Below, one piece after another: positions 895 to 62,649 of a stretch of 64,000 bases of DNA. The notes beneath the pieces are model-generated. The model was not told the origin of the DNA. It made no database searches and saw nothing but the letters and a program-made list of their open reading frames with translations. Every line of letters starts with the position of its first letter. Within the stretch, counting starts at the first letter, position 1. The stretch spans positions 1 through 64,000 of the IMG/VR virus record IMGVR_UViG_3300007770_001284, one strand, 5' to 3'. The position numbers and the translations under genes were made by a program.

Positions 895-1623
895 ATGATT
901 GTACCGATATGCATCGGCATGCCAAGATCGGCATCTCGGATGACATGGCAACTGGCTAAACAACTGTCACCGCCAGAACCAAGCTGGTGGCAGGATAGAA
1001 TGAATATTGATGCCCCGAGTGCTCGCGTAGAGAACCCACAGGATTCTCCTTGGCCACACAGGTCTCACAACTATGTTTCTGGTAGCGATCCTGTAATCTA
1101 TACATACCGGAACCCTGTGGAGGCATACCTTTCTTTTCTTTCAAGGGTGAGCCCGGCGGTGGTATGGTATCCTAATCGAACAGCAGTAAATGAGATCCTA
1201 CAACACGTTCGAACACAGAGAAAATTGCAGCTAGACAAAGGAAGGGCAAGAAATGTCTTGTGGCTACGATACGAAGACTATTTCGGTGATGACAGAAAAC
1301 GACTTAATGACATCATGGAATTTATGGGAGTAGTAAGATCGCCCGCTGAACAAGAGAATATTCTAAAATATGTGAGCCTTTCTGCAAATCGAGCAAGATC
1401 AAAAGACATTCCGACCAATATTGATGATGCTGTGGCTTTTCACAAGTGGGAGAATACAGTGACCGGAATCCAGGGTCATCATATCAATGAAGCCACGCAA
1501 GGCCGAGTTGGTGCTTATATAGATGCTTATCCTGATGAAGTATCTCAGATTAGGTCAGCTCGACCCAACGAGCCTCTTGGCGAGTTACGACTTTTTGCCG
1601 AGTCACTTGGATATACGGTGTAG
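895..1623 (+). CDS. sulfotransferase-family protein (Sulfotransfer_1-like)
   Basis: 5'-PSB-like GMPRSASRM, 3'-PB-like YTYRNPVEAYLS, LRYED motif. Confidence 0.7.
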   Translation: MIVPICIGMPRSASRMTWQLAKQLSPPEPSWWQDRMNIDAPSARVENPQDSPWPHRSHNYVSGSDPVIYTYRNPVEAYLSFLSRVSPAVVWYPNRTAVNEILQHVRTQRKLQLDKGRARNVLWLRYEDYFGDDRKRLNDIMEFMGVVRSPAEQENILKYVSLSANRARSKDIPTNIDDAVAFHKWENTVTGIQGHHINEATQGRVGAYIDAYPDEVSQIRSARPNEPLGELRLFAESLGYTV

Positions 1624-1624
1624 C

Positions 1625-2086
1625 ATGCTTATTTTCATGTCTATTCTGGCTGGTGTCCTATATGCGAATCTAATTGAATATTGCATTCATCGTTATTTGT
1701 TCCACGGTTTTGGTCGATCGGGTTCAAGCGTCTTTGCATTCCACCTAAGAGTGCATCATTCGATAGCTAGAAGTAACGGGTTTCTTGATGACCGTGTGTC
1801 TCACAATGAGCTGATTGGACTACCGATCGTTGTCCTGCTTCATATTCCGTTCTTGTCGATACTTCCTGTGTTCTTCTACACCATCACGACATACGCATTC
1901 CTGTTCATCGTCGTCCATAACTTGATTCATCGTTATCCGCTTTTCGCACAACGATATTTTTGGTGGCACTGGAACCATCATATGCGGAACCAGAATAAGA
2001 GCTGGGGTGTTGTATTACCGATCACTGACGTCATAGTCGGAACGCTAGAAGACAACAGGATCAAGACTAAGAATCGGCGCGGCTAA
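1625..2086 (+). CDS. fatty acid hydroxylase / sterol desaturase superfamily membrane enzyme
   Basis: His boxes EYCIHRYLFH, HLRVHH, HNLIH, HWNHH; terminal WGVVLPITDVIVGT; hydrophobic segments. Confidence 0.85.
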   Translation: MLIFMSILAGVLYANLIEYCIHRYLFHGFGRSGSSVFAFHLRVHHSIARSNGFLDDRVSHNELIGLPIVVLLHIPFLSILPVFFYTITTYAFLFIVVHNLIHRYPLFAQRYFWWHWNHHMRNQNKSWGVVLPITDVIVGTLEDNRIKTKNRRG

Positions 2087-2094
2087 TAACAGAA
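2072..2094 (+). repeat. 23-bp direct repeat, copy 1 (AATCGGCGCGGCTAATAACAGAA)
   Basis: identical to 2641..2663; the pair flanks CDS 2165..2641. Confidence 0.9.
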
Positions 2095-2164
2095 AGAAAG
2101 TGTGTATTTATCGACCGCGAAGTCTAAAATAAGAAAGGTTCACAAATGAAAGGAGCAACCGATA

Positions 2165-2641
2165 ATGTCAATTTTTGAAACGCTGCGGGAAATGAATATG
2201 CCAGGAGACTCTGTTGTCAGTCTGTCTTTGAGCGAGGGCACCGATGTCTTCGTACATAACGAGTCAGAGGTCGAGACAGCGCTAACGGAGACAACTGTGG
2301 TATCAGAGTTTGCAGAGCTCGTCGCGACCAAGGGACTTGAAGTTACCACTGCATACGGAACGAACGTGCTTGACTCTCTCCGTGATGATGGTTTGCTGGA
2401 TGATTACGATCGAGAAGGGTGGTTCTCTGACTATCTTGCGGAGACGATGAACGATAACTTCTACGATCTAGATCTTATCGAGTATTCTACCGAGAAGTAC
2501 GATTACAAGCGCGGGTTCTGTACCTTGACCGCTGATGTCCGAGTCACTCTTGAGAATCTTCTTGATGTGTGTCCGCCTCTTACTGGGTGGGATGTTCAAG
2601 TGAAGACTCCAAACGGGACGCTCACTGTTACCAACGACTAA
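2165..2641 (+). CDS. acidic hypothetical protein
   Basis: 158-aa ORF with upstream AAGGAG Shine-Dalgarno. Confidence 0.8.
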   Translation: MSIFETLREMNMPGDSVVSLSLSEGTDVFVHNESEVETALTETTVVSEFAELVATKGLEVTTAYGTNVLDSLRDDGLLDDYDREGWFSDYLAETMNDNFYDLDLIEYSTEKYDYKRGFCTLTADVRVTLENLLDVCPPLTGWDVQVKTPNGTLTVTND

Positions 2642-2663
2642 ATCGGCGCGGCTAATAACAGAA
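2641..2663 (+). repeat. 23-bp direct repeat, copy 2
   Basis: identical to 2072..2094. Confidence 0.9.
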
Positions 2664-2678
2664 GTATTATAAGGTGCC

Positions 2679-3470
2679 ATGCATAAAAGAGAAATAATAC
2701 ACATACACATTCCAAAAACAGGCGGTACTTGGTTGAATGAGACCCTAGCAGCTGTTATTCCAGATTATTTTTCGTTTGGTGAGCGTGATCATGTAGCAGT
2801 TGGTGCGCAATTGGAAGGGATTAAGTCATGGAGACGTACGGCACAACAGGTTGTTGATGATATACCGTGTACGTTGGTTGTGGCGCCTACAGGACCAGCC
2901 AAATATCCGCAACGATATCTTTCGGCTACCAAAATCAGCGTGTGTCGAAATCCTTACGATCTTCTTGTCAGCTATTATTGCCATGACTGGGATTGTGCTG
3001 GTGCTCCAGCTAGTGCCGACCTTGGTGATCATCCTATGGGTTGGGACAATATCAATGCGATTCATGGGATTCGTGATTTTGATGGCTTCATAAAAAGATA
3101 TTGCGATCCGGATTTTAAGTGGCATCATGTGCACCGACAACGACACCTGTTTTACCAGATGTACGACGCATCGGGTAGCTGTGGTATCGATATTATCATG
3201 CGGAATGAACGATTGCACGAAGCAATAAGCACATTTTTAGTATCAATGGATTATTGCACTGTTGATGAGATGAAAGTACATGATAGGCGAGTAAATACAT
3301 CTCCGGGAAAGACCCGAGATTATCGTAGTTATTATACTGATGAATTGATGGATCTTGTGACAGAGAAGTGCGCAAAAGAATTGCGAGATTATGCTTACGA
3401 TTTCGACGGCCCTACCGATGCCGACGCATTTCTTGAGAACAGTCGTGAATTGTATTACGATTTTGCCTGA
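2679..3470 (+). CDS. sulfotransferase family 2 protein
   Basis: IHIHIPKTGGT, VCRNPYDLLVSYY, C-terminal YRSYYTDEL...YDF. Confidence 0.85.
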   Translation: MHKREIIHIHIPKTGGTWLNETLAAVIPDYFSFGERDHVAVGAQLEGIKSWRRTAQQVVDDIPCTLVVAPTGPAKYPQRYLSATKISVCRNPYDLLVSYYCHDWDCAGAPASADLGDHPMGWDNINAIHGIRDFDGFIKRYCDPDFKWHHVHRQRHLFYQMYDASGSCGIDIIMRNERLHEAISTFLVSMDYCTVDEMKVHDRRVNTSPGKTRDYRSYYTDELMDLVTEKCAKELRDYAYDFDGPTDADAFLENSRELYYDFA

Positions 3471-3480
3471 TGTTGATGGT

Positions 3481-3526
3481 GGCTAATAACAGAAATCCCT
3501 AAAGGAAGAGAGCAATGCAGAAGAAG
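3481..3526 (+). repeat. 46-bp direct repeat, copy 1 (GGCTAATAACAGAAATCCCTAAAGGAAGAGAGCAATGCAGAAGAAG)
   Basis: matches 4669..4714 with 1 mismatch; includes the SD and the first codons MQKK. Confidence 0.9.
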
Positions 3527-4690
3527 TCAACCCGCAAGAAAACCTCTGAAAAGATTATCCACATACACCAATCAAAGACCGGTGGCACTTGGTTGAACAC
3601 GATACTACCGAAGTATCTAAAAAACGATTATATTGCTATGCCAACCGCATACAATATAGCATCGCAGGTCTGGAAGTATGGAGACGCTGGAGCTCGTTTA
3701 AACCTCTCCCGGAAACATCTTAACGATATCTATCACAGCCCTGAATTTCATGATGTAACAAAAGTCAGTATTTGTAGGAATCCATTCGATTATCTTGTAA
3801 GTCGATATCATCAAGATGGCTTCCAGGGCACGTTTCACCCATTAGAAAAATATAGCATCCCCGGGGTACCAGCTGGAATGGATTGTGCTAACGTAGTTCA
3901 TAAAATAGGTTCTTTTGACGAGTATATCAAAAAATACTGCGACCCGGACTTTCCCTTTGTGGACCCGGATACTAGAACGTTTTTCTTTCATACGATGTTT
4001 CAAGTAGACGGATCGTGCGGTGTCGACATAATAATAAGAAATGAGATGCTTAATTCTGCTGTTGGAAAGATTGTGAGTCTACACTCTCGTTTTCGGGGTA
4101 AAGAGGAGGAGGTAAGACAGGAGATTTTACAAGAATCTATCATCAATGCTTCACCCGCGCGCGAGAAGAAAGATTACAGATCATATTACACTGATGAGTT
4201 ACGTGAATTGGTCGAAAAAAAATGTGATGCTGAACTGATGTTATTTGAATATGACTTCGATGGACCGATTAATGATTATGAGTTTATTAATCCAGACGGA
4301 TTATTCTATCATGTCATGACTTTAACAGCGATGAAAAATGTTAACCCTACAATGAAATCAGATATCCAAGAGGGTATCGTGCGCGCAATGGACATGATTT
4401 TCAACGGCCCTGACGGAATTGATCAGGAGGGATTAAAGATGCTAATGGCAGCTCATCACCATATCACACCAAATGTATTTCTTCCATACGATTCGAACAC
4501 TCTTGTATGGAATGTGGGAAATGATTGGAATGACAATCCAATCTGGAAGATGCTGCCCTCTCAAGTGAGAGTAAGCGGGGTTGGCCTTAAACGATGGGGA
4601 GTGACTGACGAAGAGATAGCACAAGCAAAGGCGAGTAACAACGGCGATGTGCTAGCCCTGCTCCGCGCGGCTAAAAACAGAAATCCCTAA
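3515..4690 (+). CDS. sulfotransferase family 2 protein with C-terminal extension; paralog of 2679..3470
   Basis: IHIHQSKTGGTWLN, ICRNPFDYLVS, KKYCDPDF, GSCGVDIIIRNE and YRSYYTDEL shared with the upstream gene. Confidence 0.85.
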   Translation: MQKKSTRKKTSEKIIHIHQSKTGGTWLNTILPKYLKNDYIAMPTAYNIASQVWKYGDAGARLNLSRKHLNDIYHSPEFHDVTKVSICRNPFDYLVSRYHQDGFQGTFHPLEKYSIPGVPAGMDCANVVHKIGSFDEYIKKYCDPDFPFVDPDTRTFFFHTMFQVDGSCGVDIIIRNEMLNSAVGKIVSLHSRFRGKEEEVRQEILQESIINASPAREKKDYRSYYTDELRELVEKKCDAELMLFEYDFDGPINDYEFINPDGLFYHVMTLTAMKNVNPTMKSDIQEGIVRAMDMIFNGPDGIDQEGLKMLMAAHHHITPNVFLPYDSNTLVWNVGNDWNDNPIWKMLPSQVRVSGVGLKRWGVTDEEIAQAKASNNGDVLALLRAAKNRNP

Positions 4691-5682: not shown

Positions 5683-5797
5683 ACGACCATATGTCTTGGG
5701 TCGACAGGGGTAGTTTTTGCACTAGTGCCCTCGGTCGCTCTCCACGTGGAGTATAAAAAAAAGGGAGAATTGAAATCTCTCCTTAGCCCCCGTACGG

Positions 5798-5972
5798 GTG
5801 AGACATTTTTTTGTCTCACTTTTGTATCACATTCTGTAACATTTTTATGTATCATTTGTTACGGTGTTACATTTTTTTGTAACACTATTCCGTAACATTT
5901 ATGTCTCACTTCGGTGGATCTCTCACGCTCAACTCCTCTCAAGTATATTATTGTAACATTACACGTCTCACT
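5798..5972. repeat. iterated TGWNWCA/GTAACA motifs and GTGAGACA-T6-TGTCTCAC inverted repeat in a non-coding region
   Basis: GTAACA at 5836, 5879, 5892, 5953; TGTTAC at 5857, 5865; GTATCA at 5824, 5849; GTCTCACT at 5813, 5903, 5965. Confidence 0.85.
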
Positions 5973-6054
5973 GTTCACGACTGTTTTCCACGAGAGCGTA
6001 CGCTGAGTCTACCCGGCGCGGGGGCGGAAGTGAAAAAAAAGTTTTAACATTATC

Positions 6055-6083
6055 ATGAACAACATCGGCTAACCTCTTATTAT
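6055..6083 (+). promoter_or_regulatory. sigma70-type promoter for 6139..6363
   Basis: ATGAAC-N17-TATTAT; followed by a 5' hairpin GTTGGGGA/TCCTCAAC. Confidence 0.55.
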
Positions 6084-6138: not shown

Positions 6139-6363
6139 ATGCCGTATAGCAAGAATCAGTCCACCAAGCGCTTTAGTTTTGGTATCACACGTAACTCCAC
6201 CAGCAAGAAGGCTGGCGCGAATGTCGTAACAATCGCAACCAACGCGGACGACAGTATGTACTACTCGACCCCCACCACGCAGCTCTCAATGACTGTCAAG
6301 GAAGCCCGAGTACTTCAGAGTTTCCTCAACGAGACTCTCGAGAGTGATATCAGCGTAGGGTAA
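6139..6363 (+). CDS. 74-aa monocistronic hypothetical protein
   Basis: ORF between its own promoter and a strong terminator. Confidence 0.8.
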   Translation: MPYSKNQSTKRFSFGITRNSTSKKAGANVVTIATNADDSMYYSTPTTQLSMTVKEARVLQSFLNETLESDISVG

Positions 6364-6382
6364 TTTTTTACCGACGTGATTT

Positions 6383-6413
6383 AAAGCCGGGGATTTTTCC
6401 CCGGCTTTTTTTT
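6383..6413 (+). terminator. Rho-independent terminator
   Basis: AAAGCCGGGGA-TTTT-TCCCCGGCTTT followed by a T run. Confidence 0.9.
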
Positions 6414-6440
6414 GAACAAAAGGCCGAGCGCTCTTACTAT
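6412..6440 (+). promoter_or_regulatory. sigma70-type promoter for candidate ncRNA
   Basis: TTGAAC-N17-TACTAT; predicted +1 at G6447 coincides with the start of the closing stem. Confidence 0.65.
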
Positions 6441-6446
6441 TGAATT

Positions 6447-6660
6447 GGATCAGGGAGAGGTAAGAAGATGCCGTAGAAACTCGGGGAATGTGGAAGCGGA
6501 AAAAGTCAGCGCGTTGGGGGGACGCAAGGGTGATGTCATCGCCGTGTTTGGGAATGGTGGAACGTCGGCGAAAGCGGTGACGCAAACGAACCGTCAGACC
6601 GCAACATCGCCCGGGTGGTCGGGTCCGAGTTCCGACCACCCACTCCCCCTTCCCTGGTCC
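6447..6660 (+). ncRNA. candidate novel structured ncRNA (~214 nt)
   Basis: closing stem 6447-6456/6651-6660; stems 6528-36/6604-12, 6539-44/6566-71, 6574-78/6598-6602, 6613-22/6632-41. Confidence 0.65.
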
Positions 6661-6691
6661 GATTTACGGAGGAAAATATTTTGCACAGCGC

Positions 6692-6720
6692 GTGCAAAAC
6701 TAGTGGTAATGTGGTACAAT
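6692..6720 (+). promoter_or_regulatory. conserved early promoter, copy 1
   Basis: GTGCAA-N17-TACAAT with extended -10 TG; same motif at 8606, 10068, 13323. Confidence 0.85.
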
Positions 6721-6765
6721 ATAATTGAATGGAGGGATTGGTTCCCCCACTAACTTAGGAAGTAT

Positions 6766-7581
6766 ATGAGACTCCGTGACTACAAAGCCCTCCTCGTATC
6801 AGACCGCAAAGCGGCGATGCTATTCGATCTAACTGAGCGCCACCCACGCGGACCAGAAGCTAAGCTCCGCGCACGTGACTACGAGCCACACGAGGGTTAT
6901 TACAATAACGTCGGTGCTGTGCTGGTGCTGAAAGAGTCTTCAATCCCGGCGACAGCTGAAGGATCACCCGCTACCGGGGGATGGGACCCTCGCGAGATTT
7001 ACGAAATCGAATCCGGCGAGTGGGAGCTTAAGCGACTCCTCGAGCGTATCGAAGTACCTGAGGATGTCGGTCGTGGGTCAACTTGGGGAGTCCAAGATGG
7101 CAATCGGAAGCTGTTCCCCGGGGGAGGATCGGCACTGACTCGTAGGTCCCGCCGCGCTAGCGGACGTATCTACCAAGCGAAGCGGTGGGTCAAGGAAAAT
7201 ATCAAGACTGCTATCTACAGCGTCTCCCTCGGCTACGGCACTGAGGTCCACGTCCACGGTGACAGTGACGAACAAGCGTTCATGCAGTACGAAATGTTCC
7301 TCAAGGGTGGAGTGGCCGGAATCCCGGACGCTCGTAAAGGGTACGACAATCAAGCTCGCTACGTTAAGCCGGCCGATAGTCCGACCGCGCTGATGACTCT
7401 CAACTCGAAGTTCGTCAATGACATGGACAGTCAGGTTGCTGCTAGCCTGGCTAACATTGAAAAGCTGAAGAAGGAAGTGGAAGCGATGAAGGCCGCTAGG
7501 GAGTTGGTGTACAGCTACTCGGTCAACATGGCAGCTACCTACGGTATCGATGATGATGAAGATGACGAGGCGGCAGCATAA
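6766..7581 (+). CDS. hypothetical early protein with C-terminal coiled coil and acidic tail
   Basis: 271-aa ORF with SD AGGAAG; first gene after the promoter at 6692. Confidence 0.85.
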   Translation: MRLRDYKALLVSDRKAAMLFDLTERHPRGPEAKLRARDYEPHEGYYNNVGAVLVLKESSIPATAEGSPATGGWDPREIYEIESGEWELKRLLERIEVPEDVGRGSTWGVQDGNRKLFPGGGSALTRRSRRASGRIYQAKRWVKENIKTAIYSVSLGYGTEVHVHGDSDEQAFMQYEMFLKGGVAGIPDARKGYDNQARYVKPADSPTALMTLNSKFVNDMDSQVAASLANIEKLKKEVEAMKAARELVYSYSVNMAATYGIDDDEDDEAAA

Positions 7582-7882: not shown

Positions 7883-8170
7883 ATGGCAGATAATCTCGCA
7901 GTCTTTCACACTCTCTCGAAAACGTTGGATAATACTGAACTACGTGCAGCAATCAATATTCTGATTCGTGAGCGTAAATCCCGTGATGAGAGAAAGTCCA
8001 ATGATAATAGGTACTTGCTTAAGGTCGGTGACCGCGTTGAGTGGAACGGTCGAGCTGGGAATGCTACCGGTACTGTAACGAAGGTCAAGCGTAAGAAGGC
8101 TCTCGTCACGGAAGATATAATGAAGAGTCGGTGGGATATCCCGCTTAGCATGCTTACAAAGGTTTCATAG
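7883..8170 (+). CDS. hypothetical protein with C-terminal SH3/KOW-like domain
   Basis: LKVGDRVEW...GTVTKVKRKKALV...WDIPLSML; SD GGAGG. Confidence 0.8.
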   Translation: MADNLAVFHTLSKTLDNTELRAAINILIRERKSRDERKSNDNRYLLKVGDRVEWNGRAGNATGTVTKVKRKKALVTEDIMKSRWDIPLSMLTKVS

Positions 8171-8578: not shown

Positions 8579-8605
8579 AATAAAGTGAATTTTATTTGCA
8601 GCTTC

Positions 8606-8634
8606 GTGCAATTCTTCCCATAATATGGTACAAT
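8606..8634 (+). promoter_or_regulatory. conserved early promoter, copy 2
   Basis: GTGCAA-N17-TACAAT, then ATAAATGAAGG. Confidence 0.85.
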
Positions 8635-8700
8635 ATAAATGAAGGTGGGGAAAGGAAGAGGTCCTTCTCCCCCCAAATAGTCACCCACTAAGGACAAATC

Positions 8701-10055: not shown

Positions 10056-10067
10056 ATCTAACACTTC

Positions 10068-10096
10068 GTGCAATTGTGCTCAACATGTGGTACAAT
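10068..10096 (+). promoter_or_regulatory. conserved early promoter, copy 3
   Basis: GTGCAA-N17-TACAAT, then ATAATTGAAGG. Confidence 0.85.
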
Positions 10097-10118
10097 ATAA
10101 TTGAAGGTAGGAATGGAT

Positions 10119-13307: not shown

Positions 13308-13322
13308 CTTTTGTTTTTCTTC

Positions 13323-13351
13323 GTGCAAACTGAGCCCACGTGTGGTATAAT
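13323..13351 (+). promoter_or_regulatory. conserved early promoter, copy 4
   Basis: GTGCAA-N17-TATAAT, then ATAAATGAAGG. Confidence 0.85.
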
Positions 13352-13357
13352 ATAAAT

Positions 13358-13740
13358 GAAGGTCGGGGTAGATAGTCCTCTTCCCTCTGTTCTTTGAATC
13401 TCGTAAAGGAAGTAGCAAATGGCTTGGCTCCACGTGTCCGGCTCAATATTGAGCGGCAAAGCTTAGGATGACGATGGTATAAGACCCATCGAGCAAGTAG
13501 AGAGCGTCTGACCCGCAAGGGATGTCCGGTTCTCGATCACGCACCTGTGCCAATCACGTGGCCTTTACGCAATATTATGAGGAGCTGTTGGGGATACCCA
13601 GCAGAGTCGATGGGAGTCGGCAGTCGTCGTTGAAGTCGAAGCTCGCGAGCCAGTTAACTAATGTATCGCGTCTCTCTGAGGGCTGGTGAACAGTTAAATA
13701 ACCAATACCCGCATCGTACGGACGGGCTCCCATCTCTCCT
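13358..13740 (+). ncRNA. candidate structured ncRNA or long structured leader (two modules)
   Basis: stems 13426-36/13555-63, 13441-54, 13472-77/13486-91, CCC-GCAA-GGG 13512-21, 13580-84/13736-40, 13585-92/13597-604, 13609-16/13727-34, 13650-55/13681-86; no credible ORF. Confidence 0.55.
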
Positions 13741-35756: not shown

Positions 35757-36923
35757 ATGTCAATTTTTCAAAGACACAAGACAATCGCTGATCGATCTGC
35801 TGGAGATCGATCCCGACATCGCAAAAAAATTGAGCGCGCTATTAAAGAGGGTATCTATAATATCGTTGCAGAAGAATCCATAATAGGAAAAGAGGGAAAG
35901 AAGAAATTTCGGATTCCTGTCCGCGGTATTAAGGAGTATCGTTTTGTCTATGGTGACAACGGATCAAAAAGAGTGGGCTCTGCGCAGGGTAAAGATGTCA
36001 AGCGTGGACAAGTGATCGGTAAAAAAGAGCAAGCAGAAGCTCCCGGAGAAGGCGAGGCTGGAAACCAGAAAGGAGAAGAGTATTACGAAGTAGAGCTTAC
36101 GCTAGACCAATTATCAGAATATCTTTTCAAAGATTTAGAGCTTCCAAACTTTGAAAAAAAGAAAAACATGAATGTGATATCGAAAAAGATCAAACGTCAT
36201 GGCTACAGAAGCAAAGGTATCCGACCACGATTAGACAAAAAAAAGACTGTAGTTGAAAAACTTAAGCGAAAAAATAAAAGCAAATTTATTTCAAGTGCAG
36301 AAAAGCAAGAAGAAGAAAGTTTCCCGTTCCACGATAATGACCTAAAGTATAGACACTACAAGGTTCACGAGAAAAAAAGCTCTAATGCAGTCATATTCTT
36401 CTTAATGGATATTTCAGGATCGATGTCAAAGCCAAAAAAATATCTAGCGCGAAGCTTCTTTTTTCTGTTATATCATTTTATTAGAGCGAGATATGATACA
36501 GTTGATTTAGTTTTTGTGGCTCATGATGTAGAGGCCTACGAAGTGACAGAAGAACAATTTTTTGGACGAGGATCTTCAGGGGGAACACTGGTATCCAGCG
36601 CGCTGAGCATGACAGATAACGTTATATCATCTAGATATCACCCTAATAGTTGGAATGTATATATTTTTCAGTGCTCTGATGGTGATAACTGGCCTACTGA
36701 TAACCAGAAGACGACTGAGCTAGCAAATCGGTTGCTTGAAAAAGTTCAATTTTTTGGATATTGTCAAATAGAGCCGAACGCAGAAAGAGCCGCTCACCCC
36801 AACCATGGCAGCTTACAAGAAGTGTATCAGCCTCTTATAGGACAAAAGTTTAAAACTGCTGAGGTCAGCTCAAAAGAGCATATCTGGCCAGCATTTAGAA
36901 CGTTTTTTGGAAATGATTTATGA
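35757..36923 (+). CDS. yeaH: YeaH/YhbH (DUF444) family protein
   Basis: DRSRHRKKI, FLMDISGSM, GGT.VSSAL, WNVYIFQCSDGDNW. Confidence 0.9.
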   Translation: MSIFQRHKTIADRSAGDRSRHRKKIERAIKEGIYNIVAEESIIGKEGKKKFRIPVRGIKEYRFVYGDNGSKRVGSAQGKDVKRGQVIGKKEQAEAPGEGEAGNQKGEEYYEVELTLDQLSEYLFKDLELPNFEKKKNMNVISKKIKRHGYRSKGIRPRLDKKKTVVEKLKRKNKSKFISSAEKQEEESFPFHDNDLKYRHYKVHEKKSSNAVIFFLMDISGSMSKPKKYLARSFFFLLYHFIRARYDTVDLVFVAHDVEAYEVTEEQFFGRGSSGGTLVSSALSMTDNVISSRYHPNSWNVYIFQCSDGDNWPTDNQKTTELANRLLEKVQFFGYCQIEPNAERAAHPNHGSLQEVYQPLIGQKFKTAEVSSKEHIWPAFRTFFGNDL

Positions 36924-38230
36924 GCGCTAATTTCTTAAAATCTCTTGAAGCGTGGGATGAAAAGATAGTCAAGCTAGCTAGCGAATACGGGTTAGATTGG
37001 TTTCCTATCATTTATGAAACCTGTGACTATTATGAGATGATTGGTAACATGGCATATCACGGCATGCCCACGCATTATAGGCATTGGAGCTTCGGGAAAT
37101 CATTCGAGCGTACCCATGCAATGTATGATGCTGGACTAGAGGGTCTTCCATACGAACTAATAATAAACAGCGATCCTTCGTTAGCCTACTTGATGGAAGA
37201 AAACCCATTGTACTTACAAGTTTTGATTATGTGCCACTGCGTTGGTCACTCAGATTTTTTTAAGAACAATATTACTTTTGCAAATACAGGGCCAGACCAT
37301 ATTCTATTACGCATGCGCAATGCAAAGAGATTTGTCGACGGTCTAATAGAAGATCCTTCAATCGGTGTACAAAGGGTAGAAGAAATTCTAGATGCTGCTC
37401 ATGCCCTTTCTCTTCAAGTGCCAAGACGTTATAAAAAATATGTGACGCAGAAAGAACAAAAAATGCACTTAATTCATGATATCAAAAACGGTAAATATGA
37501 GAATGCTGACATAACACCCAGCCCTAAAGCAATACCGGTTAGTCCAGAGCAAAATATTTTGGCATTCCTCGCCGAGTGCAGTCCTCATCTCGAAGACTGG
37601 GAGCGGGAGCTATTACACTTCGCGCGCGAGGATGCTGAATATTTCATGCCACAAATTAGGACAAAGATCATGAATGAAGGGTGGGCGTCATTTTGGCATT
37701 ACAGATTGATGCACGACCTTCAGCTCCCAACCTCGATGCATATTCCTTTTCTCAAAATGCACAATGAAGTTACAAAACCTCACCTGGGGAGCATTAACCC
37801 TTACCATTTGGGATTTTATCTTTTTAGAAAAATAGAAGAGCGCCACGGGCTAAAAGAATGTTTCATCGCAAGAGAAGCATTAAATGATGAATCGTTTATA
37901 AGACAATATTTAACAGAGGAAGATTGTGTTAATTTAAACTTGTTTACGTTTGGACTGGACAAAAAAAGCTATGTAATAGAGGATGTATCGGATGAACCTG
38001 GATGGAAATCAGTGAAAGAAAACCTAATCAAACAGGTTTCTGCGAATAATATTCCTTCAATTATAGTTGACAGAGTGGACAGCGCAAACATACTGTGCTT
38101 GAAACACGATCATGACGGCCGCGATTTGGAGCTAGAGTATGCAGAATCAGTTATTGAACACATCACAACGTTATGGGGGGATGTAGTTAAACTTGATACG
38201 TTCATTGAAGATGAGCCATTTGAGATTTAA
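36920..38230 (+). CDS. spoVR: SpoVR/YcgB family protein
   Basis: GMPTHYRHWSFGK, YELIINSDP, HCVGHSDFFKNN, TKIMNEGWASFWH, NPYHLG. Confidence 0.93.
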   Translation: MSANFLKSLEAWDEKIVKLASEYGLDWFPIIYETCDYYEMIGNMAYHGMPTHYRHWSFGKSFERTHAMYDAGLEGLPYELIINSDPSLAYLMEENPLYLQVLIMCHCVGHSDFFKNNITFANTGPDHILLRMRNAKRFVDGLIEDPSIGVQRVEEILDAAHALSLQVPRRYKKYVTQKEQKMHLIHDIKNGKYENADITPSPKAIPVSPEQNILAFLAECSPHLEDWERELLHFAREDAEYFMPQIRTKIMNEGWASFWHYRLMHDLQLPTSMHIPFLKMHNEVTKPHLGSINPYHLGFYLFRKIEERHGLKECFIAREALNDESFIRQYLTEEDCVNLNLFTFGLDKKSYVIEDVSDEPGWKSVKENLIKQVSANNIPSIIVDRVDSANILCLKHDHDGRDLELEYAESVIEHITTLWGDVVKLDTFIEDEPFEI

Positions 38231-38244
38231 TACGGAGCAAAAAT

Positions 38245-40179
38245 ATGTCAAAGAATAAGAGCAAATATCTTGATATCATTACTAGTCAAAGAAAAAAGAA
38301 GTCTTCTGAAAAGTTTGAGGGAAGTTTGCTTGACTATTTTGCACTCTTAGAAAAGAATCCATCGTTAGCTGACCGCGCGCATAAGAGGCTTTACGATGTT
38401 ATAACGTCACACGGGGTCTCAGTACTTGAAGACGAAGACCCACGAAAGTACAAGCTTTTTGATGGTGACAATGTTAAGATTTATGATTATTTCGCTGATG
38501 AATTTTTTGGAATGGAAAATGTTATTTCAAAAATCTTAAGATACCTGAGGTCTGCTGCGCATAATGGTGAAGAGTCCAGACAGGTGTTATTATTAATGGG
38601 TCCAGTTGGTGCCGGGAAATCTGCTTTAACAGAGCATATCAAAGCTTCGCTTGAAAGTGTAAAATATTATCACCTAAAAGACGATCCGCAGAGAGGCGAT
38701 CCACTACAGCTAGTTCCGCGATCGCTACGGAAACGTTTCAGCAAGATGCTTAACGTTTCAATTGAGGGAGATATTTCTCCTGTTGCCAGGTTCTTATTGT
38801 TCGAAAAGTACGAGGGGTCTTACGAAGAATTTGAAGTTGTTGAAACAACATTCTCTCAACGTGCTCGTCGGGGGATCGCAACAGTACCGCCAATGGATGC
38901 AAACAGCCAAGATGTTTCAGTGTTAATTGGGTCAGAAGACATTTCGAAGCTAGACAAATATTCTGAAGATGACCCCCGGGCGCTATCCCTAAATGGTGCG
39001 TTTAACGTCGGTAACAGAGGGCTGGTCGAACTTGTGGAGGTCTTTAAGAACGAAATTGAGTTTCTCCATACTATCATTACTGCAACACAGGAGAAGAGGA
39101 TTCCTTCCCCCGGAAAGCATGACATGCTACACTTCGACGGTGTTATTCTTGCTCATTGTAATGAAGCCGAATGGAACCGGTTTCAAAGCGAACATACAAA
39201 CGAGGCAATATTAGATAGAATTGTTAAAGTTGAAGTACCGTATGTTCTAGAGCTAGCGCAAGAAATGAAGATATATCAAAAAATTCTTGATCGTTCCCAT
39301 TTTTCTTCTCATATCGCGCCTCATACACTTCGTGTGGCGTCAATGTTTTCTATTCTTAGTCGGCTCCATGCTAGCCAAAAGTGCGATCTTCTTACGAAGC
39401 TTAAGATTTATAACGGCGAAGATGTTGTTGAAAAGGGTCGTGTCAAAAAAATTGATATTAAAGACCTAAGAGACGAAGCTCCGCATGAGGGAATGCAGGG
39501 TATTTCAACGCGCTTTATAATGAAGGCTATCGATAATGCTTTGAGCGATTCTGATAAAGATTTTATTACTCCTGTTTCTATTCTTGACTCATTAGTGAAG
39601 CAGGTCAAAGAGCAACTTACTGATTTTGATTTTCAAAACCACTGTCTAGATCTGCTCAGAAATACCGTACGTGACGAGTATCTTCGTATGCTGGAAAACG
39701 AAATTGCAAAAGCGTTTATAACAGCATACGAAGAACAAGCACAGGCTATTTTCGAAAATTACCTCGACAATGCCGAAGCCTTCACAACTCACTCTAAAAT
39801 GAAAGACAAAGTAACAAAGGAAGAGCGCACCCCTGACGAAGAATTTATGAAAGCAATTGAGGGAGCGATCGGGGTGAGCAATTCTGGAAGAGAGGGCTTC
39901 AGGGCTGACGTTACCGCATATATGTTTTCAAAAATGAGACGTGGCGAAGTTGTAGACTATACATCTTATGAACCGTTAAAAGACGCAATCGAAACATATC
40001 TCATCACATCTGTGAAAGATCTGGCACGAATTGTTACAAAATCAAAAACAAGAGATGACGACCAAAAACAAAAGTACTCAAGCATGGTACAAACGCTGAT
40101 CGACGAATATGGTTATACAGCTGCGTCCGCGGAAGAGATCTTGGTGTTCGCCAGCAATAACTTATGGAGAGATAGCTAA
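38245..40179 (+). CDS. prkA: PrkA/YeaG AAA+ serine protein kinase
   Basis: FFGME, LMGPVGAGKS, GNRGLVELVEVFK, NEAILDR, GISTRF. Confidence 0.93.
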   Translation: MSKNKSKYLDIITSQRKKKSSEKFEGSLLDYFALLEKNPSLADRAHKRLYDVITSHGVSVLEDEDPRKYKLFDGDNVKIYDYFADEFFGMENVISKILRYLRSAAHNGEESRQVLLLMGPVGAGKSALTEHIKASLESVKYYHLKDDPQRGDPLQLVPRSLRKRFSKMLNVSIEGDISPVARFLLFEKYEGSYEEFEVVETTFSQRARRGIATVPPMDANSQDVSVLIGSEDISKLDKYSEDDPRALSLNGAFNVGNRGLVELVEVFKNEIEFLHTIITATQEKRIPSPGKHDMLHFDGVILAHCNEAEWNRFQSEHTNEAILDRIVKVEVPYVLELAQEMKIYQKILDRSHFSSHIAPHTLRVASMFSILSRLHASQKCDLLTKLKIYNGEDVVEKGRVKKIDIKDLRDEAPHEGMQGISTRFIMKAIDNALSDSDKDFITPVSILDSLVKQVKEQLTDFDFQNHCLDLLRNTVRDEYLRMLENEIAKAFITAYEEQAQAIFENYLDNAEAFTTHSKMKDKVTKEERTPDEEFMKAIEGAIGVSNSGREGFRADVTAYMFSKMRRGEVVDYTSYEPLKDAIETYLITSVKDLARIVTKSKTRDDDQKQKYSSMVQTLIDEYGYTAASAEEILVFASNNLWRDS

Positions 40180-45251: not shown

Positions 45252-45611
45252 ATGTCTAGCGCACGCACTAAGAAATATAATAGGAATAGATACAGGAAAA
45301 CCTACCAACCCGTGCGTGCATTGCCCGTTTGGGGGATTCATTCTGATAAGGAAATCGTATTAGAGACGTTGCGCGTTTCGTTTAAGGGCTTAGACGAAAT
45401 TACCTTTACTCTTAACGGAAGATACAGCAGTCTACCAGGTATTGTGGTAACACCCATCGGTTCGACAGCTGATCTTGGAGACGTCAACATCTTCATCTCT
45501 TCGTTAACACTTGGTAGCGTACCATCGGGCGGAGGAAAATCCGTGTCGGTAGTACTGGGCGCGAGCACTCATTTCGAGGGTGACGTTTTCGTACAGGCAT
45601 TAATGATATGA
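45252..45611 (+). CDS. hypothetical (virion-associated?) protein
   Basis: 119 aa; P.IV.TPIG motif shared with the N-terminus of the next gene. Confidence 0.75.
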   Translation: MSSARTKKYNRNRYRKTYQPVRALPVWGIHSDKEIVLETLRVSFKGLDEITFTLNGRYSSLPGIVVTPIGSTADLGDVNIFISSLTLGSVPSGGGKSVSVVLGASTHFEGDVFVQALMI

Positions 45612-60709: not shown

Positions 60710-60723
60710 CCAGGAAGGATTCA

Positions 60724-61506
60724 ATGGCTAAGGTCAGTATTGTACTAGCAGTTCACAATGGCGGAAAAACGATCGGTCGAGCACTTAAGTCCGTTGCTGA
60801 GCAGACGTATCGGGATTTTGAAACAATTTTAGTGGACAACAATTGTACTGATAATACACTTGAGATAGCAAAAGAATATTCTGAGACTGCGAACATACGA
60901 GTTGTTAAGTGCAAGACTCCTGGCCATCCAGCAGCTTTAAACACTGGGATATACAACAGCGATTCTCCTTATATCGCTCGACAAGACGATGATGACTATT
61001 GGTATCCAAGTAAGCTAGAGAAGCAGGTCGCATTTTTAGATTCAAATCCAGAAGTAGGTGTTCTGGGAACTCGAATACGATTAGTGAATGCGGCCGGCGA
61101 AGAAGAAGAGCTTGGATCAATGGGGCGCCCAGTTGTGTACCCGCCTGATGATCACAATATCAAGTATTTTTTGATCCAAGGGCAGAACGCTTTTTGTCAT
61201 TCTTCTGTTGTCATGAGACGAGAGGTGCCGCTAATAGCTGGTGGTTATAGTGAGCATTTTCCACTAGCGCAAGATATGCATTTATGGTTAAAGGCTATAC
61301 CATATTTCGCCTTTGCAAATTTACCAGAAGTATTAGTTGATTACACTCAGGCACCGACCGACTGGGACAATCAAAAATATGATCCGAGAGTTGTCAGAGT
61401 TTTGTCGACGATGTATTACCAACTATACAAACTTCAGGGTGTAATTTCTGGTGATAGGCAGGAAGTGATTTACGATTGGGAGATTGAAAGGAAATATGAG
61501 CGATAG
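60724..61506 (+). CDS. GT2 family glycosyltransferase
   Basis: VSIVLAVHNG, LVDNNCTDNT, YIARQDDDD, HSSVVMR, QDMHLW. Confidence 0.92.
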   Translation: MAKVSIVLAVHNGGKTIGRALKSVAEQTYRDFETILVDNNCTDNTLEIAKEYSETANIRVVKCKTPGHPAALNTGIYNSDSPYIARQDDDDYWYPSKLEKQVAFLDSNPEVGVLGTRIRLVNAAGEEEELGSMGRPVVYPPDDHNIKYFLIQGQNAFCHSSVVMRREVPLIAGGYSEHFPLAQDMHLWLKAIPYFAFANLPEVLVDYTQAPTDWDNQKYDPRVVRVLSTMYYQLYKLQGVISGDRQEVIYDWEIERKYER

Positions 61507-62638: not shown

Positions 62639-62649
62639 GTGAAAATTAG

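What the first reader, a model, noticed from the sequence alone, without database searches (positions are those of the whole stretch)
6412..6660. Unannotated ~214-nt structured ncRNA with its own promoter
Seen: TTGAAC-N17-TACTAT predicts +1 at G6447, exactly where a 10-bp closing stem (6447-56 / 6651-60) begins. Inside are stems 6528-36/6604-12, 6539-44/6566-71 and 6574-78/6598-6602, a perfect 10-bp hairpin 6613-22/6632-41 abutting the first, and a hairpin 6511-14/6522-25 whose G-run loop could form a pseudoknot with CCCCC 6645-49. It sits between a strong terminator and the next promoter, so it is an independent unit. I see no tRNA, tmRNA, SRP, RNase P or common riboswitch signature. Inference: a novel phage early ncRNA, possibly an anti-defence decoy or an RNP scaffold.
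Basis: partly seen in the sequence, partly recalled or inferred. Interest (0 to 1): 0.8.

Follow-up and report, generated by a model that had tools for sequence, protein, structure and literature searches.

The report
Conserved structured RNA of marine jumbo phages
The flagged stretch is a real, previously uncatalogued, highly structured non-coding RNA gene that sits in front of the same early gene block in every related uncultured marine jumbo-phage sequence I could check; its fold is well supported, its function is still unknown.

Summary
The window is the start of a 254.7-kb IMG/VR phage contig.

The same unit lies directly upstream of every homologue of the 271-aa gene that has enough flank. 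These come from about 50 marine metagenome loci with 40-93% protein identity. The unit is a P1 promoter, a 170-260-nt RNA, hairpin T, a second promoter P2, then the gene.

A covariance model built from two distant members finds window 6525-6655 at E = 3.5e-5. In the resulting alignment 95.8% of cells pair, against 42-48% for slid partners, and all 28 pairs show two-sided changes.

No Rfam, tRNA or tmRNA match was found. The 113-aa ORF is not conserved.

The fold has a 5'/3' closing helix, one or two small hairpins and a three-way junction with a conserved G-rich loop. A long hairpin abuts the junction. That hairpin is a normal terminator in most lineages, but not in the window's.

My best reading is a stable trans-acting early RNA, probably protein-binding. 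The function is inferred, not shown. A cis-acting leader is the main rival.

The parts
6383..6416 (+). Intrinsic terminator of the upstream 74-aa gene: an 11-bp stem followed by a T-run. It marks the 5' boundary of the unit.
   Evidence: Terminator scan; sequence.
6412..6440 (+). Promoter P1: -35 TTGAAC (6412-6417), 17-nt spacer, -10 TACTAT (6435-6440). The predicted +1 is near G6447.
   Evidence: Sequence. The (T/G)TGAACA and TA(C/T)TAT boxes are kept at constant spacing in 31 distinct related units. The +1 position is inferred.
6447..6660 (+). The structured RNA domain (214 nt). The true 3' end in this genome is not known.
   Evidence: MFE -98.2 kcal/mol, z = -4.08. Homologous units found by nhmmer and by covariance model R1.
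6447..6456 (+). 5' strand of the closing helix. It pairs with 6651-6660.
   Evidence: 10/10 pairs. Family-wide, each RNA's 5' purine-rich region pairs better with its own tail than with tails permuted among members (-14.4 against -11.7 +/- 0.58 kcal/mol, 0 of 5000).
6468..6476 (+). AUG CCG UAG, a two-codon ORF 7 nt after a GGAGAGG Shine-Dalgarno-like run. The G2 relatives have M(I/T/N)EPP(E/V)... mini-ORFs of 6-16 codons at the same place. It is probably incidental.
   Evidence: Sequence read by eye. Not conserved outside groups G1 and G2.
6511..6525 (+). Small hairpin GCGU-UGGGGGG-ACGC (the H2 position). Alternatively, its G-run 6516-6522 pairs with 6644-6650 and extends the closing helix.
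   Evidence: Other groups have one or two covarying hairpins at this position.
6528..6612 (+). P domain, a three-way junction. It consists of the P stem (6528-36/6604-12), hairpin HA (6539-44/6566-71) with the G-rich loop UUUGGGAAUGGUGGAAC (6547-6563), and hairpin HB (6574-82/6592-6602) with the loop CAAACGAAC (6583-6591).
   Evidence: In alignment A5 the P stem is 95.7% paired with two-sided changes in 8 of 8 pairs, HA is 92-93% paired and HB 84%.
6613..6641 (+). Hairpin T: an 11-bp stem with a 7-nt loop, abutting the P stem with no spacer. In most relatives it is the intrinsic terminator. Here it is followed by ACUCCCCCUU.
   Evidence: 99.5% paired, with two-sided changes in 10 of 10 pairs.
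6642..6660 (+). C/U-rich 3' tail. 6644-6650 pairs with the G-run and 6651-6660 pairs with the 5' end.
6691..6720 (+). Promoter P2 of the 271-aa gene: CGTGCAA (6691-6697) - N14 - TGGTACAAT (6712-6720), with an extended -10. It is followed by a 5'-UTR hairpin at 6731-6748.
   Evidence: It is present in every relative. The same promoter type recurs near window positions 8606, 10068 and 13323.
6766..7581 (+). The 271-aa gene always found immediately downstream. It was used as the handle to collect relatives. Its function is unknown.
   Evidence: 59 homologues at 40-93% identity. No Pfam or PHROG family. AlphaFold2 model at pLDDT 78 with no PDB fold match at E <= 0.001.

Best explanation
What it is. 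Window 6447-6660 encodes one member of a previously uncatalogued family of structured non-coding RNAs of about 170-260 nt. The family belongs to a lineage of uncultured marine jumbo phages.

The fold. A sigma-70-type promoter (P1) starts the RNA. Its purine-rich 5' segment pairs with the pyrimidine-rich 3' tail. That closes a multi-helix junction carrying:
- one or two small hairpins;
- a three-way-junction domain, made of the P stem, hairpin HA with a conserved G-rich loop (GGG(G)-N-UGG(G/U)G) and hairpin HB with an A-rich loop;
- a 10-11-bp hairpin T stacked directly on the P stem.

In most lineages T plus a U-tract is an ordinary intrinsic terminator, so a discrete small RNA is released just before the next promoter (P2).

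How it most likely works. I think it acts in trans as a stable RNA with protected ends that presents its conserved loops to a protein partner, as a scaffold or a decoy. I do not think it acts as an antisense RNA or as a leader of the downstream gene.

Shown: the family exists, its fold, its strand, its non-coding nature, its promoter and terminator signals and its fixed genomic position.
Inferred: that it is expressed early, that it accumulates as a free RNA, and the protein-binding mode of action. The partner is unknown.

My confidence that this is a genuine structured non-coding RNA family is about 0.95. The confidence given below (0.4) is for the trans-acting, protein-binding reading.
For: Fold in the window. 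All six stems are perfect, with z = -4.08 against shuffles.

Family.
- nhmmer with the window unit, and then with a profile, finds it upstream of the 271-aa gene in about 50 loci, giving 31 distinct full-length units.
- Covariance model R1 adds about 15 more loci.
- Every locus with at least 450 nt of upstream flank has the unit. L100 was missed by both searches, but reading it shows the element.

Covariation.
- Helix tables from MFE-derived helix ends, with no alignment: T is 10 bp and paired in all 31 sequences. The first four pairs of the P stem always pair and pairs 5-7 pair in 27-30 of 31, with up to six pair types per position. The HA stems differ completely between groups yet always pair.
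- R1 was built from only two G4 members (L117 and L127). It hits window 6525-6655 at 26.3 bits, E = 3.5e-5.
- On alignment A5, 95.8% of cells pair against 42-48% for slid partners. 28 of 28 pairs have two-sided changes. The covariation score is 0.575 against 0.06-0.09 for slides and 0.15 for shuffles (0 of 500).
- On a structure-blind MAFFT alignment of group G2, P is 96.8% paired, HA 89.8% and T 100%, against 35-43% for slides.
- The many G-U pairs fix the + strand.

Non-coding. No ORF is conserved in frame or in length.

Free, stable RNA rather than a leader.
- P2 lies between the RNA and the gene in every member.
- The tail beyond T pairs with the 5' region, and own tails fit better than permuted ones (0 of 5000).
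- T stays conserved and abuts the P stem even where its U-tract is lost, in G1 and G2. So T is part of the fold and not only a terminator.

Not antisense. The window holds no complementary stretch beyond chance: three 11-mers against 3.2 expected, and none of 12 nt or longer.
Against: - There are no expression data at all.
- In the window's own clade there is no U-tract after T and no terminator-like site before position 8000. P1 transcripts may therefore simply continue into the 271-aa operon, which makes the element a long 5' leader there.
- No protein partner is identified. The 271-aa protein has no recognisable fold. The KOW/Tudor-like barrel of the 95-aa protein is a weak and generic match.
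- The closing helix is largely driven by base composition. The z-score against shuffled tails averages only -1.1.
- The covariance-model alignment is fitted to the model's structure, which inflates the pairing counts somewhat.
- Only 64 kb of the 254.7-kb genome was searched for antisense targets. Host targets cannot be searched because the host is unknown.
Confidence: 0.4

Rival explanations
1. Cis-acting leader or attenuator. The structured RNA is the 5' leader of a P1 transcript. A riboswitch-like sensor, or a put/Q-type antitermination element, decides whether RNA polymerase stops at hairpin T or reads on through P2 into the 271-aa - MoxR - VWA early gene block.
For: - It has the same orientation as, and lies immediately upstream of, the same operon in every member.
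- A three-way-junction domain with conserved loops sits directly against a terminator hairpin, which is the typical aptamer-plus-expression-platform layout.
- In G1 and G2 the U-tract is weak, so read-through is likely.
- The early region is a series of promoter-gene-terminator modules that an antiterminated transcript could cross.
- A conserved 95-aa protein two genes downstream has a small beta-barrel whose best matches are the KOW domains of Spt5 and NusG.
Against: - A strongly conserved promoter with an extended -10 (P2) lies between T and the gene in all members, so the gene does not depend on P1.
- No conserved alternative (antiterminator) pairing involving the 5' strand of T was found. 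I checked the candidates by eye, and they do not co-vary with T.
- The sequence downstream of T pairs with the 5' end. That makes sense for a finished, released RNA but not for a co-transcriptional switch.
- No known riboswitch, T-box or leader family matches.
- The KOW-like match is a generic small barrel at E about 1e-3, covering only about half the protein.
Confidence: 0.27
2. Base-pairing regulatory small RNA, of the Hfq or ProQ type or of the phage immunity-RNA type (as in P4 CI, N15 CA, P1 C4). A loop or the purine-rich 5' segment pairs with phage or host mRNAs.
For: - It has its own promoter, and in most members an intrinsic terminator with a U-rich tail.
- The 5' segment is rich in A-R-N-like purine repeats and GGA motifs.
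- The position at the head of an early operon, next to operator-like repeats, resembles the leader-encoded immunity RNAs. That comparison rests on my knowledge of those systems, not on a test here.
Against: - The 64-kb window holds no complementary target beyond chance expectation.
- The candidate seed regions are either paired (the 5' tract with the tail) or G-rich loops that differ between groups.
- The RNA is much larger and more compactly folded than typical seed-type small RNAs.
- The resemblance between the HA loop and the P2 5' UTR does not track across lineages.
- The host is unknown, so host targets cannot be tested.
Confidence: 0.15
3. Structural RNA of a phage machine, for example a phi29-pRNA-like packaging RNA or another RNP subunit. 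It would be built from a 5'/3' helix plus a three-way junction with two interacting loops.
For: - The topology resembles pRNA: the ends are paired, there is a three-way junction with two hairpin loops, and the gene follows an early promoter.
- In G1 the HA loop GUUUG could pair with the HB loop CAAAC. In several G2 members UUGU(A) could pair with (U)ACAA (read by eye).
- The RNA is a strictly conserved core gene of the lineage.
Against: - There is no hit to Rfam's library, which to my knowledge includes a phage pRNA model.
- The loop-loop complementarity is absent in G4 and G5.
- There are extra helices and a terminator hairpin that pRNA lacks.
- To my knowledge, no RNA-dependent packaging motor is known outside the phi29-like phages.
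Confidence: 0.06
4. Not an RNA gene. The region would be protein-coding (the 113-aa TTG ORF at 6412-6753, or a mini-ORF), or merely a promoter plus a terminator with chance structure in between.
For: - An uninterrupted 113-codon frame exists in the window.
- G2 relatives carry a short M(I/T/N)EPP... ORF behind a good Shine-Dalgarno sequence.
Against: - The 113-aa frame is cut to 56 codons in L005 and is shifted or absent in all other groups. Its start codon lies inside the -35 box, upstream of the transcription start.
- Substitutions follow base-pairing, not codons.
- The mini-ORF is limited to G2. In the window it is reduced to Met-Pro-stop.
Confidence: 0.03

Closest known systems
Leader-encoded phage immunity RNAs (P4 CI RNA, N15 CA RNA, P1/P7 C4 RNA)
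   Same: A small stable structured RNA is made from the very start of an early operon, next to an operator-rich control region, in the same orientation as the genes it precedes.
   Different: Those RNAs are about 70-80 nt long, are processed from the leader, and act by pairing with complementary sites in the same transcript. This one is 170-260 nt long, has its own terminator in most lineages, is separated from the genes by a second promoter, and has no complementary site beyond chance in the window. The properties of the known RNAs are from my own knowledge and were not tested here.
Bacteriophage phi29 pRNA (packaging RNA)
   Same: It is phage-encoded and follows an early promoter. The 5' and 3' ends pair into a helix, and the core is a three-way junction with two hairpin loops.
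   Different: There is no Rfam hit. The loop-loop complementarity is not conserved across the family. This RNA has extra hairpins and a terminator hairpin stacked on the junction. The phage is a marine jumbo phage unrelated to any cultured phage in the collection.
Lambda 6S RNA (pR'-tR' short transcript) and HK022 put RNAs
   Same: A short transcript runs from a constitutive-looking promoter and ends at a terminator just ahead of a gene block. The put RNAs are also folded RNA elements placed at the start of early transcripts.
   Different: In lambda no second promoter follows tR', and to my knowledge the 6S RNA has no covariation-supported fold. The put RNAs are two hairpins of about 70 nt in total. 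Here the fold is a five-helix junction whose 3' tail pairs back to the 5' end.
Bacterial Y RNAs (YrlA) and 6S RNA, both stable protein-binding RNAs
   Same: The 5' and 3' ends are paired into a terminal helix. The body is compact and conserved loops are displayed. A protein-binding mode is presumed.
   Different: No Rfam family, including to my knowledge the Y RNA and 6S RNA families, is matched. No TROVE/Ro60 or RtcB gene is among the window ORFs scanned. The RNA is branched, not rod-like as 6S RNA is.
Terminator-coupled riboswitches with a three-way-junction aptamer (purine-riboswitch type)
   Same: A three-way junction has two hairpins whose loops are conserved, and its closing stem lies directly next to an intrinsic terminator.
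   Different: A promoter lies between the terminator and the gene. No antiterminator alternative was found. There are extra 5' hairpins and a tail-to-5' closing helix. No known aptamer family matches.

Membership tests
Any Rfam 15 family (4227 covariance models) | Score at or above the family's gathering threshold, or at least a credible E-value, over the element. | tested here: not met
   There are no gathering-level hits in the 64-kb window. At E <= 10 in 6300-6800, every hit lies on or against the upstream terminator (6383-6408) and none lies in the folded body beyond the first base, 6447. Ten diverse member loci searched at E <= 1 gave nothing on the element.
tRNA / tmRNA | Cloverleaf with an anticodon, or a tRNA-like domain plus a tag ORF, as recognised by ARAGORN. 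| tested here: not met
   ARAGORN finds 0 genes in the whole window.
phi29-type pRNA | A 5'/3' helix plus a three-way junction with two hairpins. | tested here: met
   A closing helix and the P/HA/HB three-way junction are present. This is topology only.
   Possible 4-6-bp HA-HB complementarity exists in G1 and some G2 members, but none in G4 or G5 (read).
Y RNA / YrlA | A Ro60 (TROVE) gene in the neighbourhood, and a match to the Rfam Y RNA model. | tested here: not met
   There is no Rfam hit. No TROVE, Ro60 or RtcB family is among the window ORFs scanned against Pfam. The remaining 190 kb of the genome was not available.
Riboswitch or transcription attenuator | The element sits in the 5' UTR of the regulated gene with no promoter in between. 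| tested here: not met
   The conserved promoter P2, with an extended -10, lies between T and the gene in all members.
Riboswitch or transcription attenuator | An intrinsic terminator as expression platform, with a mutually exclusive antiterminator. | tested here: inconclusive
   A terminator is present in G3-G5 (4-8 U in 9 nt) but not in the window's clade (2 U). I found no conserved alternative pairing by inspection. There was no systematic search.
Seed-type base-pairing small RNA (Hfq/ProQ class, or phage immunity RNAs) | An accessible segment complementary to target RNAs. | tested here: not met
   Within the window there are three complementary 11-mers against 3.2 expected and none longer. 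The host and the rest of the genome were not testable.
Seed-type base-pairing small RNA (Hfq/ProQ class) | Binding to Hfq or ProQ. | not testable with these tools
   This needs a binding assay. The host is unknown.
Protein-coding gene (ORF 6412-6753) | The reading frame is kept in relatives, and substitutions follow codons. | tested here: not met
   The frame is truncated or shifted in L005, L085 and all other groups. The indels between the window and L005 are not multiples of three.
The new family itself (P1-RNA-T unit of this phage lineage) | P stem, HA and T helices in this order with T abutting P, and a position between P1 and P2 upstream of the 271-aa gene. | tested here: met
   The window scores 26.3 bits, E = 3.5e-5, with a model built only from two distant members. 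The helices are perfect and the synteny is identical.

The most novel reading that the evidence does not exclude
This RNA is a core 'housekeeping' RNA subunit of a marine jumbo-phage lineage. It would be a new class of RNP RNA that works with the co-conserved early proteins encoded just downstream (the 271-aa protein of unknown fold and the 95-aa protein with a KOW/Tudor-like barrel). Together they would reprogram a host machine at the start of infection, for example by making RNA polymerase terminator-resistant or by sequestering a global RNA-binding regulator.
Probability: 0.15. Interest if true: 0.85.

Novelty: new variant of a known kind. Interest (0 to 1): 0.62.

Why it matters
Structured non-coding RNAs with strong covariation and no known family are rare finds. 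Past examples led to new riboswitches, ribozymes and RNP machines.

This one is unusually well defined for a metagenomic candidate:
- it has a conserved promoter and a conserved terminator;
- it folds into a five-helix junction supported by many compensatory changes;
- it was present in every member of a diverse, globally sampled but uncultured jumbo-phage lineage that I could check, always at the head of the same gene block.

That pattern suggests the RNA is needed by the phage rather than being an accessory.

It also offers a concrete handle on the early programme of marine jumbo phages, a group whose biology is almost entirely inferred from sequence. The RNA, its promoters and its neighbours can be synthesised and tested in a surrogate host.

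If the function turns out to be ordinary, such as a stable leader fragment, the family is still a useful new entry for RNA family libraries and for annotating marine viromes.

Tried and rejected
1. Known RNA families. Rfam searches at gathering and permissive thresholds on the window and on ten member loci, plus ARAGORN, found nothing.

2. Cultured-phage relatives. There was no DNA or protein match in the 50,697-record phage collection for the region, the first 20 kb, the 943-aa protein or the 271-aa protein.

3. Global MAFFT alignment of 25 cores followed by RNAalifold gave 0 pairs because of misalignment. mafft-xinsi and mafft-qinsi are not installed. I replaced this with MFE-derived helix tables, a covariance model from two sequences and a within-group alignment.

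As a result group G2 is tied to the family by nhmmer and by its own covariation, not by the covariance model.

5. Y-RNA idea. It was prompted by CUGGUCCGA at 6653-6661. That motif is on the wrong strand of the helix for a Ro-binding site, no Rfam hit supports it, and no TROVE gene was found.

6. HA loop as a mimic of the P2 5' UTR (both G-rich, GGAAUGG-like). The UTR variants are mosaic and do not track the RNA groups.

7. Antisense targets in the window. None beyond chance.

8. Host-genome homologues. A 23-base gapped pattern from group G4 gave 12 hits in 596 Gb. That is about my own rough chance estimate of about 16, and none matches the covariance model. The same pattern gave 0 hits in IMG/VR.

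9. Second covariance-model hits about 3 kb downstream in several loci are ordinary terminators after the MoxR gene, not extra copies.

10. T-box, CsrA-sponge, G-quadruplex and tRNA-3'-end-binding (UGGN) ideas were considered from motifs alone. None has a conserved defining feature, so I dropped them.

11. The 271-aa protein gave no Pfam, PHROG, PDB-fold or Atlas lead.

12. Two literature searches found no description of such an RNA.

Full report
**1. Where the window comes from**

The 271-aa gene at 6766-7581 and the hairpin at 6614-6640 occur with identical coordinates in IMG/VR contig IMGVR_UViG_3300007770_001284, which is 254,743 bp long. A second contig of 98,649 bp carries the same sequence. 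The window is therefore the first 64 kb of an uncultured jumbo-phage contig.

Nothing in the collection of 50,697 deposited phage records resembles it, either as DNA or for the proteins I tried. Nearly all long ORFs are on the + strand. Recognisable genes include:
- a MoxR-type AAA+ ATPase and a DUF2201/VWA protein;
- a PrkA kinase next to two genes matching PHROG families, one of them annotated 'sporulation protein';
- PhoH, a helicase, Hsp20, an HD-domain hydrolase, sulfotransferases and glycosyltransferases.

No tRNA gene and no Rfam family is found anywhere in the window.

**2. The observation**

- closing helix 6447-56/6651-60, 10 bp;
- P stem 6528-36/6604-12, 9 bp;
- HA 6539-44/6566-71, 6 bp;
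- HB 6574-78/6598-6602, 5 bp;
- T 6613-22/6632-41, 10 bp;
- the 4-bp hairpin 6511-14/6522-25.

The 214-nt RNA folds at -98.2 kcal/mol, against -78.1 +/- 4.9 for dinucleotide shuffles (z = -4.08).

In that fold the G-run 6516-22 pairs with 6644-50 as a nested continuation of the closing helix. The proposed pseudoknot is therefore not needed.

TTGAAC-N17-TACTAT is present. It is too weak for the consensus scan (8 of 12 positions), but it is phylogenetically conserved, as shown below. The upstream terminator at 6383-6408 is strong.

No terminator-like site follows the element on the + strand up to position 8000.

**3. Relatives**

The downstream 271-aa protein has 59 homologues at 93-40% identity. 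Their names and sources, where given, point to marine metagenomes, including Tara Oceans.

Fetching their contigs shows conserved synteny. The order is a variable upstream region, an uncalled gap of 400-800 nt, the 271-aa gene, an 87-98-aa gene, a gene of about 95-102 aa, small genes, the MoxR ATPase and then the VWA protein.

A profile scan of the JGI metagenomes with the protein family gave 60 more loci. nhmmer with the window's 6412-6765 detects the gap of relatives down to 53% protein identity (L009 at E = 4e-13, L008 at E = 4.5e-7). A profile of eight units finds it in about 50 loci, giving 31 distinct full-length units.

Every locus with at least 450 nt upstream of the gene has the unit. 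L100 was the only one missed by both searches, and reading it shows the element.

**4. Common anatomy**

Folding each RNA on its own gives the same plan in all groups.

- *Promoter P1.* It reads (T/G)TGAACA-N17-TA(C/T)TAT, mostly followed by AAT and a start near (A)UGGA.
- *5' segment.* It is purine-rich.
- *Small hairpins.* There are one or two, and they differ between groups.
- *P domain.* This is a three-way junction with a P stem of 5-9 bp. Hairpin HA has a G-rich loop. Hairpin HB has a short stem and an A-rich loop (GACGAAAC, CAAACGAAC or ACAAAC).
- *HA loop by group.* G4 and G5 have (A)UCCGGGGAUGGGGA. G2 has GGGAUU...AAAUGGUGG. The window's group, G1, has UUUGGGAAUGGUGGAAC.
- *Hairpin T.* It has the form GGGNNNNCGG...CCGNNNNCCC and starts 0-1 nt after the P stem.
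- *Tail.* It is pyrimidine-rich.
- *Promoter P2.* It follows 20-60 nt later and reads CGTGCAA-N14-15-TG(G/T)TA(T/C)AAT, followed by a small 5'-UTR hairpin and the gene.

I distinguish five groups:
- G1: the window, L005, L085 and others;
- G2: L008, L009, L012, L014 and others;
- G3: L015, L105 and others;
- G4: L117, L127, L139 and others;
- G5: L016, L095, L135 and others.

**5. Covariation**

*Helix tables.* Helix ends were taken from each sequence's own MFE fold, and no alignment was used. The 10 pairs of T are standard pairs in all 31 distinct sequences, with up to six pair types per position. In the P stem the first four pairs always pair and pairs 5-7 pair in 27-30 of 31 sequences, with up to six pair types per position. 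HA stems such as CGCGC/GCGCG, GUGUGU/ACACGC, GUCGCC/GGCGAC, GCGUUC/GAAUGC and GGUGA/UCACU share no sequence but always pair.

*Covariance model.* As a more objective test I built a model from only two G4 sequences, L117 and L127. It has 125 positions and 28 pairs. It finds the window's core at exactly 6525-6655 (26.3 bits, E = 3.5e-5). It also finds G1, G3, G4 and G5 members and about 15 loci that nhmmer had missed.

*Pair counts on the resulting alignment (41 distinct rows).*

| measure | observed | slid partners | shuffles |
|---|---|---|---|
| cells forming a standard pair | 95.8% | 42-48% | 63.1% (0 of 500 as high) |
| covariation score | 0.575 | 0.06-0.09 | 0.15 (0 of 500 as high) |

All 28 pairs show changes on both sides. 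Per helix, P is 95.7% paired, HA 92-93%, HB 84% and T 99.5%.

That alignment is fitted to the model, so I also counted pairs on a structure-blind MAFFT alignment of the seven G2 sequences. There P is 96.8% paired, HA 89.8% and T 100%, against 35-43% for slides. HB is length-variable and misaligned by MAFFT.

RNAalifold run on the model-fitted alignment A6 also returns the P and T helices.

The frequent G-U pairs would be A-C mismatches on the other strand, which fixes the RNA on the + strand.

**6. Not coding**

The 113-codon frame at 6412-6753 begins with the TTG of the -35 box. It is cut to 56 codons in the closest relative, L005, and is shifted in L085. It has no counterpart in other groups. 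The indels between the window and L005 are not multiples of three.

G2 relatives have a short ORF, M(I/T/N)EPP(E/V)... of 6-16 codons, behind a good Shine-Dalgarno sequence. In the window this shrinks to AUG-CCG-UAG at 6468-6476, and other groups lack it. I treat it as incidental and record it as something noticed in passing.

**7. The ends of the RNA**

In G3-G5 the nine bases after T hold 4-8 U, so T is an ordinary intrinsic terminator and the RNA would be about 172-223 nt long. In G2 the count is 2-5 U. In the window's clade it is 2 U and 6 C.

Even so, T is as well conserved in G1 and G2 and still abuts the P stem. T therefore belongs to the fold and is not only a terminator.

The tail beyond T pairs with the purine-rich 5' region. 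This gives 8-11 contiguous pairs in several G3 and G4 members and 10 + 7 pairs in the window. In G2 the partner lies at about nt 35-50 of the RNA.

Much of this pairing follows from base composition. The mean z-score against shuffled tails is only -1.1. However, each RNA's own tail fits its 5' region better than tails exchanged among 23 representatives (-14.4 against -11.7 +/- 0.58 kcal/mol, 0 of 5000). C-rich tails also tend to go with G-rich 5' regions (r = 0.60).

**8. Context**

P2-type promoters, each followed by the same initial sequence TGAAGGTGGGG, recur at window positions 6692, 8606, 10068 and 13323. They head successive modules of the early-looking region.

Upstream of P1 lie operator-like palindromes and TGTNNCA repeats at about 5797-5960. 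A GC-rich element conserved across the family follows at about 5985-6046. In most relatives that element directly precedes P1. In the window it precedes a P1-like promoter at 6056-6083 that drives an inserted 74-aa gene, and a second P1 copy at 6412 drives the RNA.

**9. What it does**

*Tests that failed:*
- no known RNA family matches;
- the window holds no complementary target beyond chance;
- the HA loop does not co-vary with the similar-looking P2 5' UTR;
- a gapped-pattern scan of 185,579 genomes found no host homologue, and all 12 hits fail the covariance model;
- no TROVE, RtcB or reverse-transcriptase gene is among the window ORFs scanned.

*Neighbouring proteins:*
- The 271-aa protein has a confident model (pLDDT 78) but no fold match.
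- The conserved 95-aa protein has an N-terminal helix and a small beta-barrel. The barrel's best matches are Spt5 and NusG KOW domains and Tudor domains, at E = 1e-3 to 1e-2. Pfam places it at the threshold for Hva1_TUDOR. This is a generic fold and only a lead.

*Weighing the evidence.* Four features point to a released, stable RNA that displays conserved loops: the paired ends, the compact junction, the conserved promoter between the RNA and the gene, and the retention of T without its U-tract. I favour a protein-binding scaffold or decoy role at about 0.4.

A cis-acting leader or attenuator is the main rival at about 0.27. It is most plausible for the window's own clade, where read-through is likely. 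A base-pairing small RNA comes next (0.15), then a pRNA-like machine RNA (0.06) and then 'not an RNA gene' (0.03).

The existence and fold of the family are shown. The expression, the timing and the mode of action are inferred.

**10. Limits**

- The host is unknown.
- Only 64 kb of the 254.7-kb genome was available.

**11. Verdict**

The family is new as an RNA family, but it belongs to the known general kind of phage-encoded stable small RNAs. Its function remains open.

Noticed in passing
window 5797-5960: An AT-rich control region with operator-like palindromes: GTGAGACATTTTTTTGTCTCAC (5797-5818) and GTGTTACATTTTTTTGTAACAC (5863-5884). It also holds many TGT(A/C/T)(A/T/C)CA repeats. The same kind of repeat array lies upstream of the RNA unit in relatives (L015, L100). 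It looks like a repressor-binding or iteron region.
   Followed up: partly
window 5985-6083: A family-wide conserved element, TTCCACGAGAGC..GAGTCT..GCGGGGGCGGAAGTGAAAAAA, is followed by a P1-type promoter (ATGAACA-N17-TATTAT). In most relatives this element sits directly before the RNA's promoter. Here it drives an inserted 74-aa gene (6139-6363), and the RNA has a second promoter copy. There is also a similar promoter on the minus strand near 5978-5950.
   Followed up: partly
window 6691-6760, 8605-8700, 10067-10110, 13322-13400: Four copies of one promoter type, CGTGCAA-N14-15-TGGTA(C/T)AATATAA(A/T)TGAAGGT(G/A/C)GG. The extended -10 and the initial transcribed sequence are near-identical in all four. 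Three of the four (6692, 8606, 13323) are followed by a G-rich stretch that looks able to form a small 5'-UTR hairpin. They head successive gene modules. The UTR variants are mosaic between related phages.
   Followed up: partly
window 6468-6476; L009:3692-3712 and other G2 loci: A mini-ORF lies behind a good Shine-Dalgarno sequence inside the RNA's 5' part. It reads M(I/T/N)EPP(E/V)... for 6-16 codons in G2 relatives and is reduced to Met-Pro-stop in the window. The Pro-Pro or Pro-stop content is reminiscent of stalling leader peptides, but the ORF is absent from other groups.
   Followed up: partly
window 7883-8170: A conserved 95-aa protein of the syntenic block. It has a long basic N-terminal helix and a small beta-barrel whose best PDB matches are Spt5 and NusG KOW domains and Tudor domains (E about 1e-3). 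It matches Pfam Hva1_TUDOR at the threshold and Phage_ProQ_C_like weakly (E = 0.065). It may bind nucleic acid or RNA polymerase.
   Followed up: partly
window 35757-40179: Three adjacent genes. The gene at 38245-40179 is a clear PrkA kinase (Pfam E = 3e-132). The genes at 35757-36923 and 36920-38230 match PHROG families of unknown function, the first also matching one annotated 'sporulation protein'. The arrangement recalls to me the bacterial yeaG-yeaH-ycgB stress module. The nearest phage PrkA copies are in Thermus phages and megaphage contigs, at about 30% identity.
   Followed up: no
window 46725-58606: Two abutting giant ORFs of 2148 and 1811 aa. I did not analyse them. The preceding 371-aa protein (45608-46723) weakly matches a PHROG virion structural protein.
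   Followed up: no
window 895-4690 and 58787-63450: Clusters of sulfotransferase-like genes (895-1623, 2679-3470) and glycosyltransferase genes (60724-63450). These are unusual auxiliary genes that suggest modification of a glycan or of the cell surface.
   Followed up: no
T hairpin of G4/G5 relatives, e.g. L139:513-532: The apical part of hairpin T keeps GAAA on the 5' side and (R)AGUA on the 3' side. These are the two strand sequences of a sarcin-ricin / loop-E (bulged-G) motif, which often serves as a protein or tertiary-contact site. The motif is absent from the window's shorter T hairpin.
   Followed up: no
window 1-64000: No tRNA gene and no Rfam family at gathering score is found in 64 kb of a jumbo-phage genome.
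   Followed up: yes
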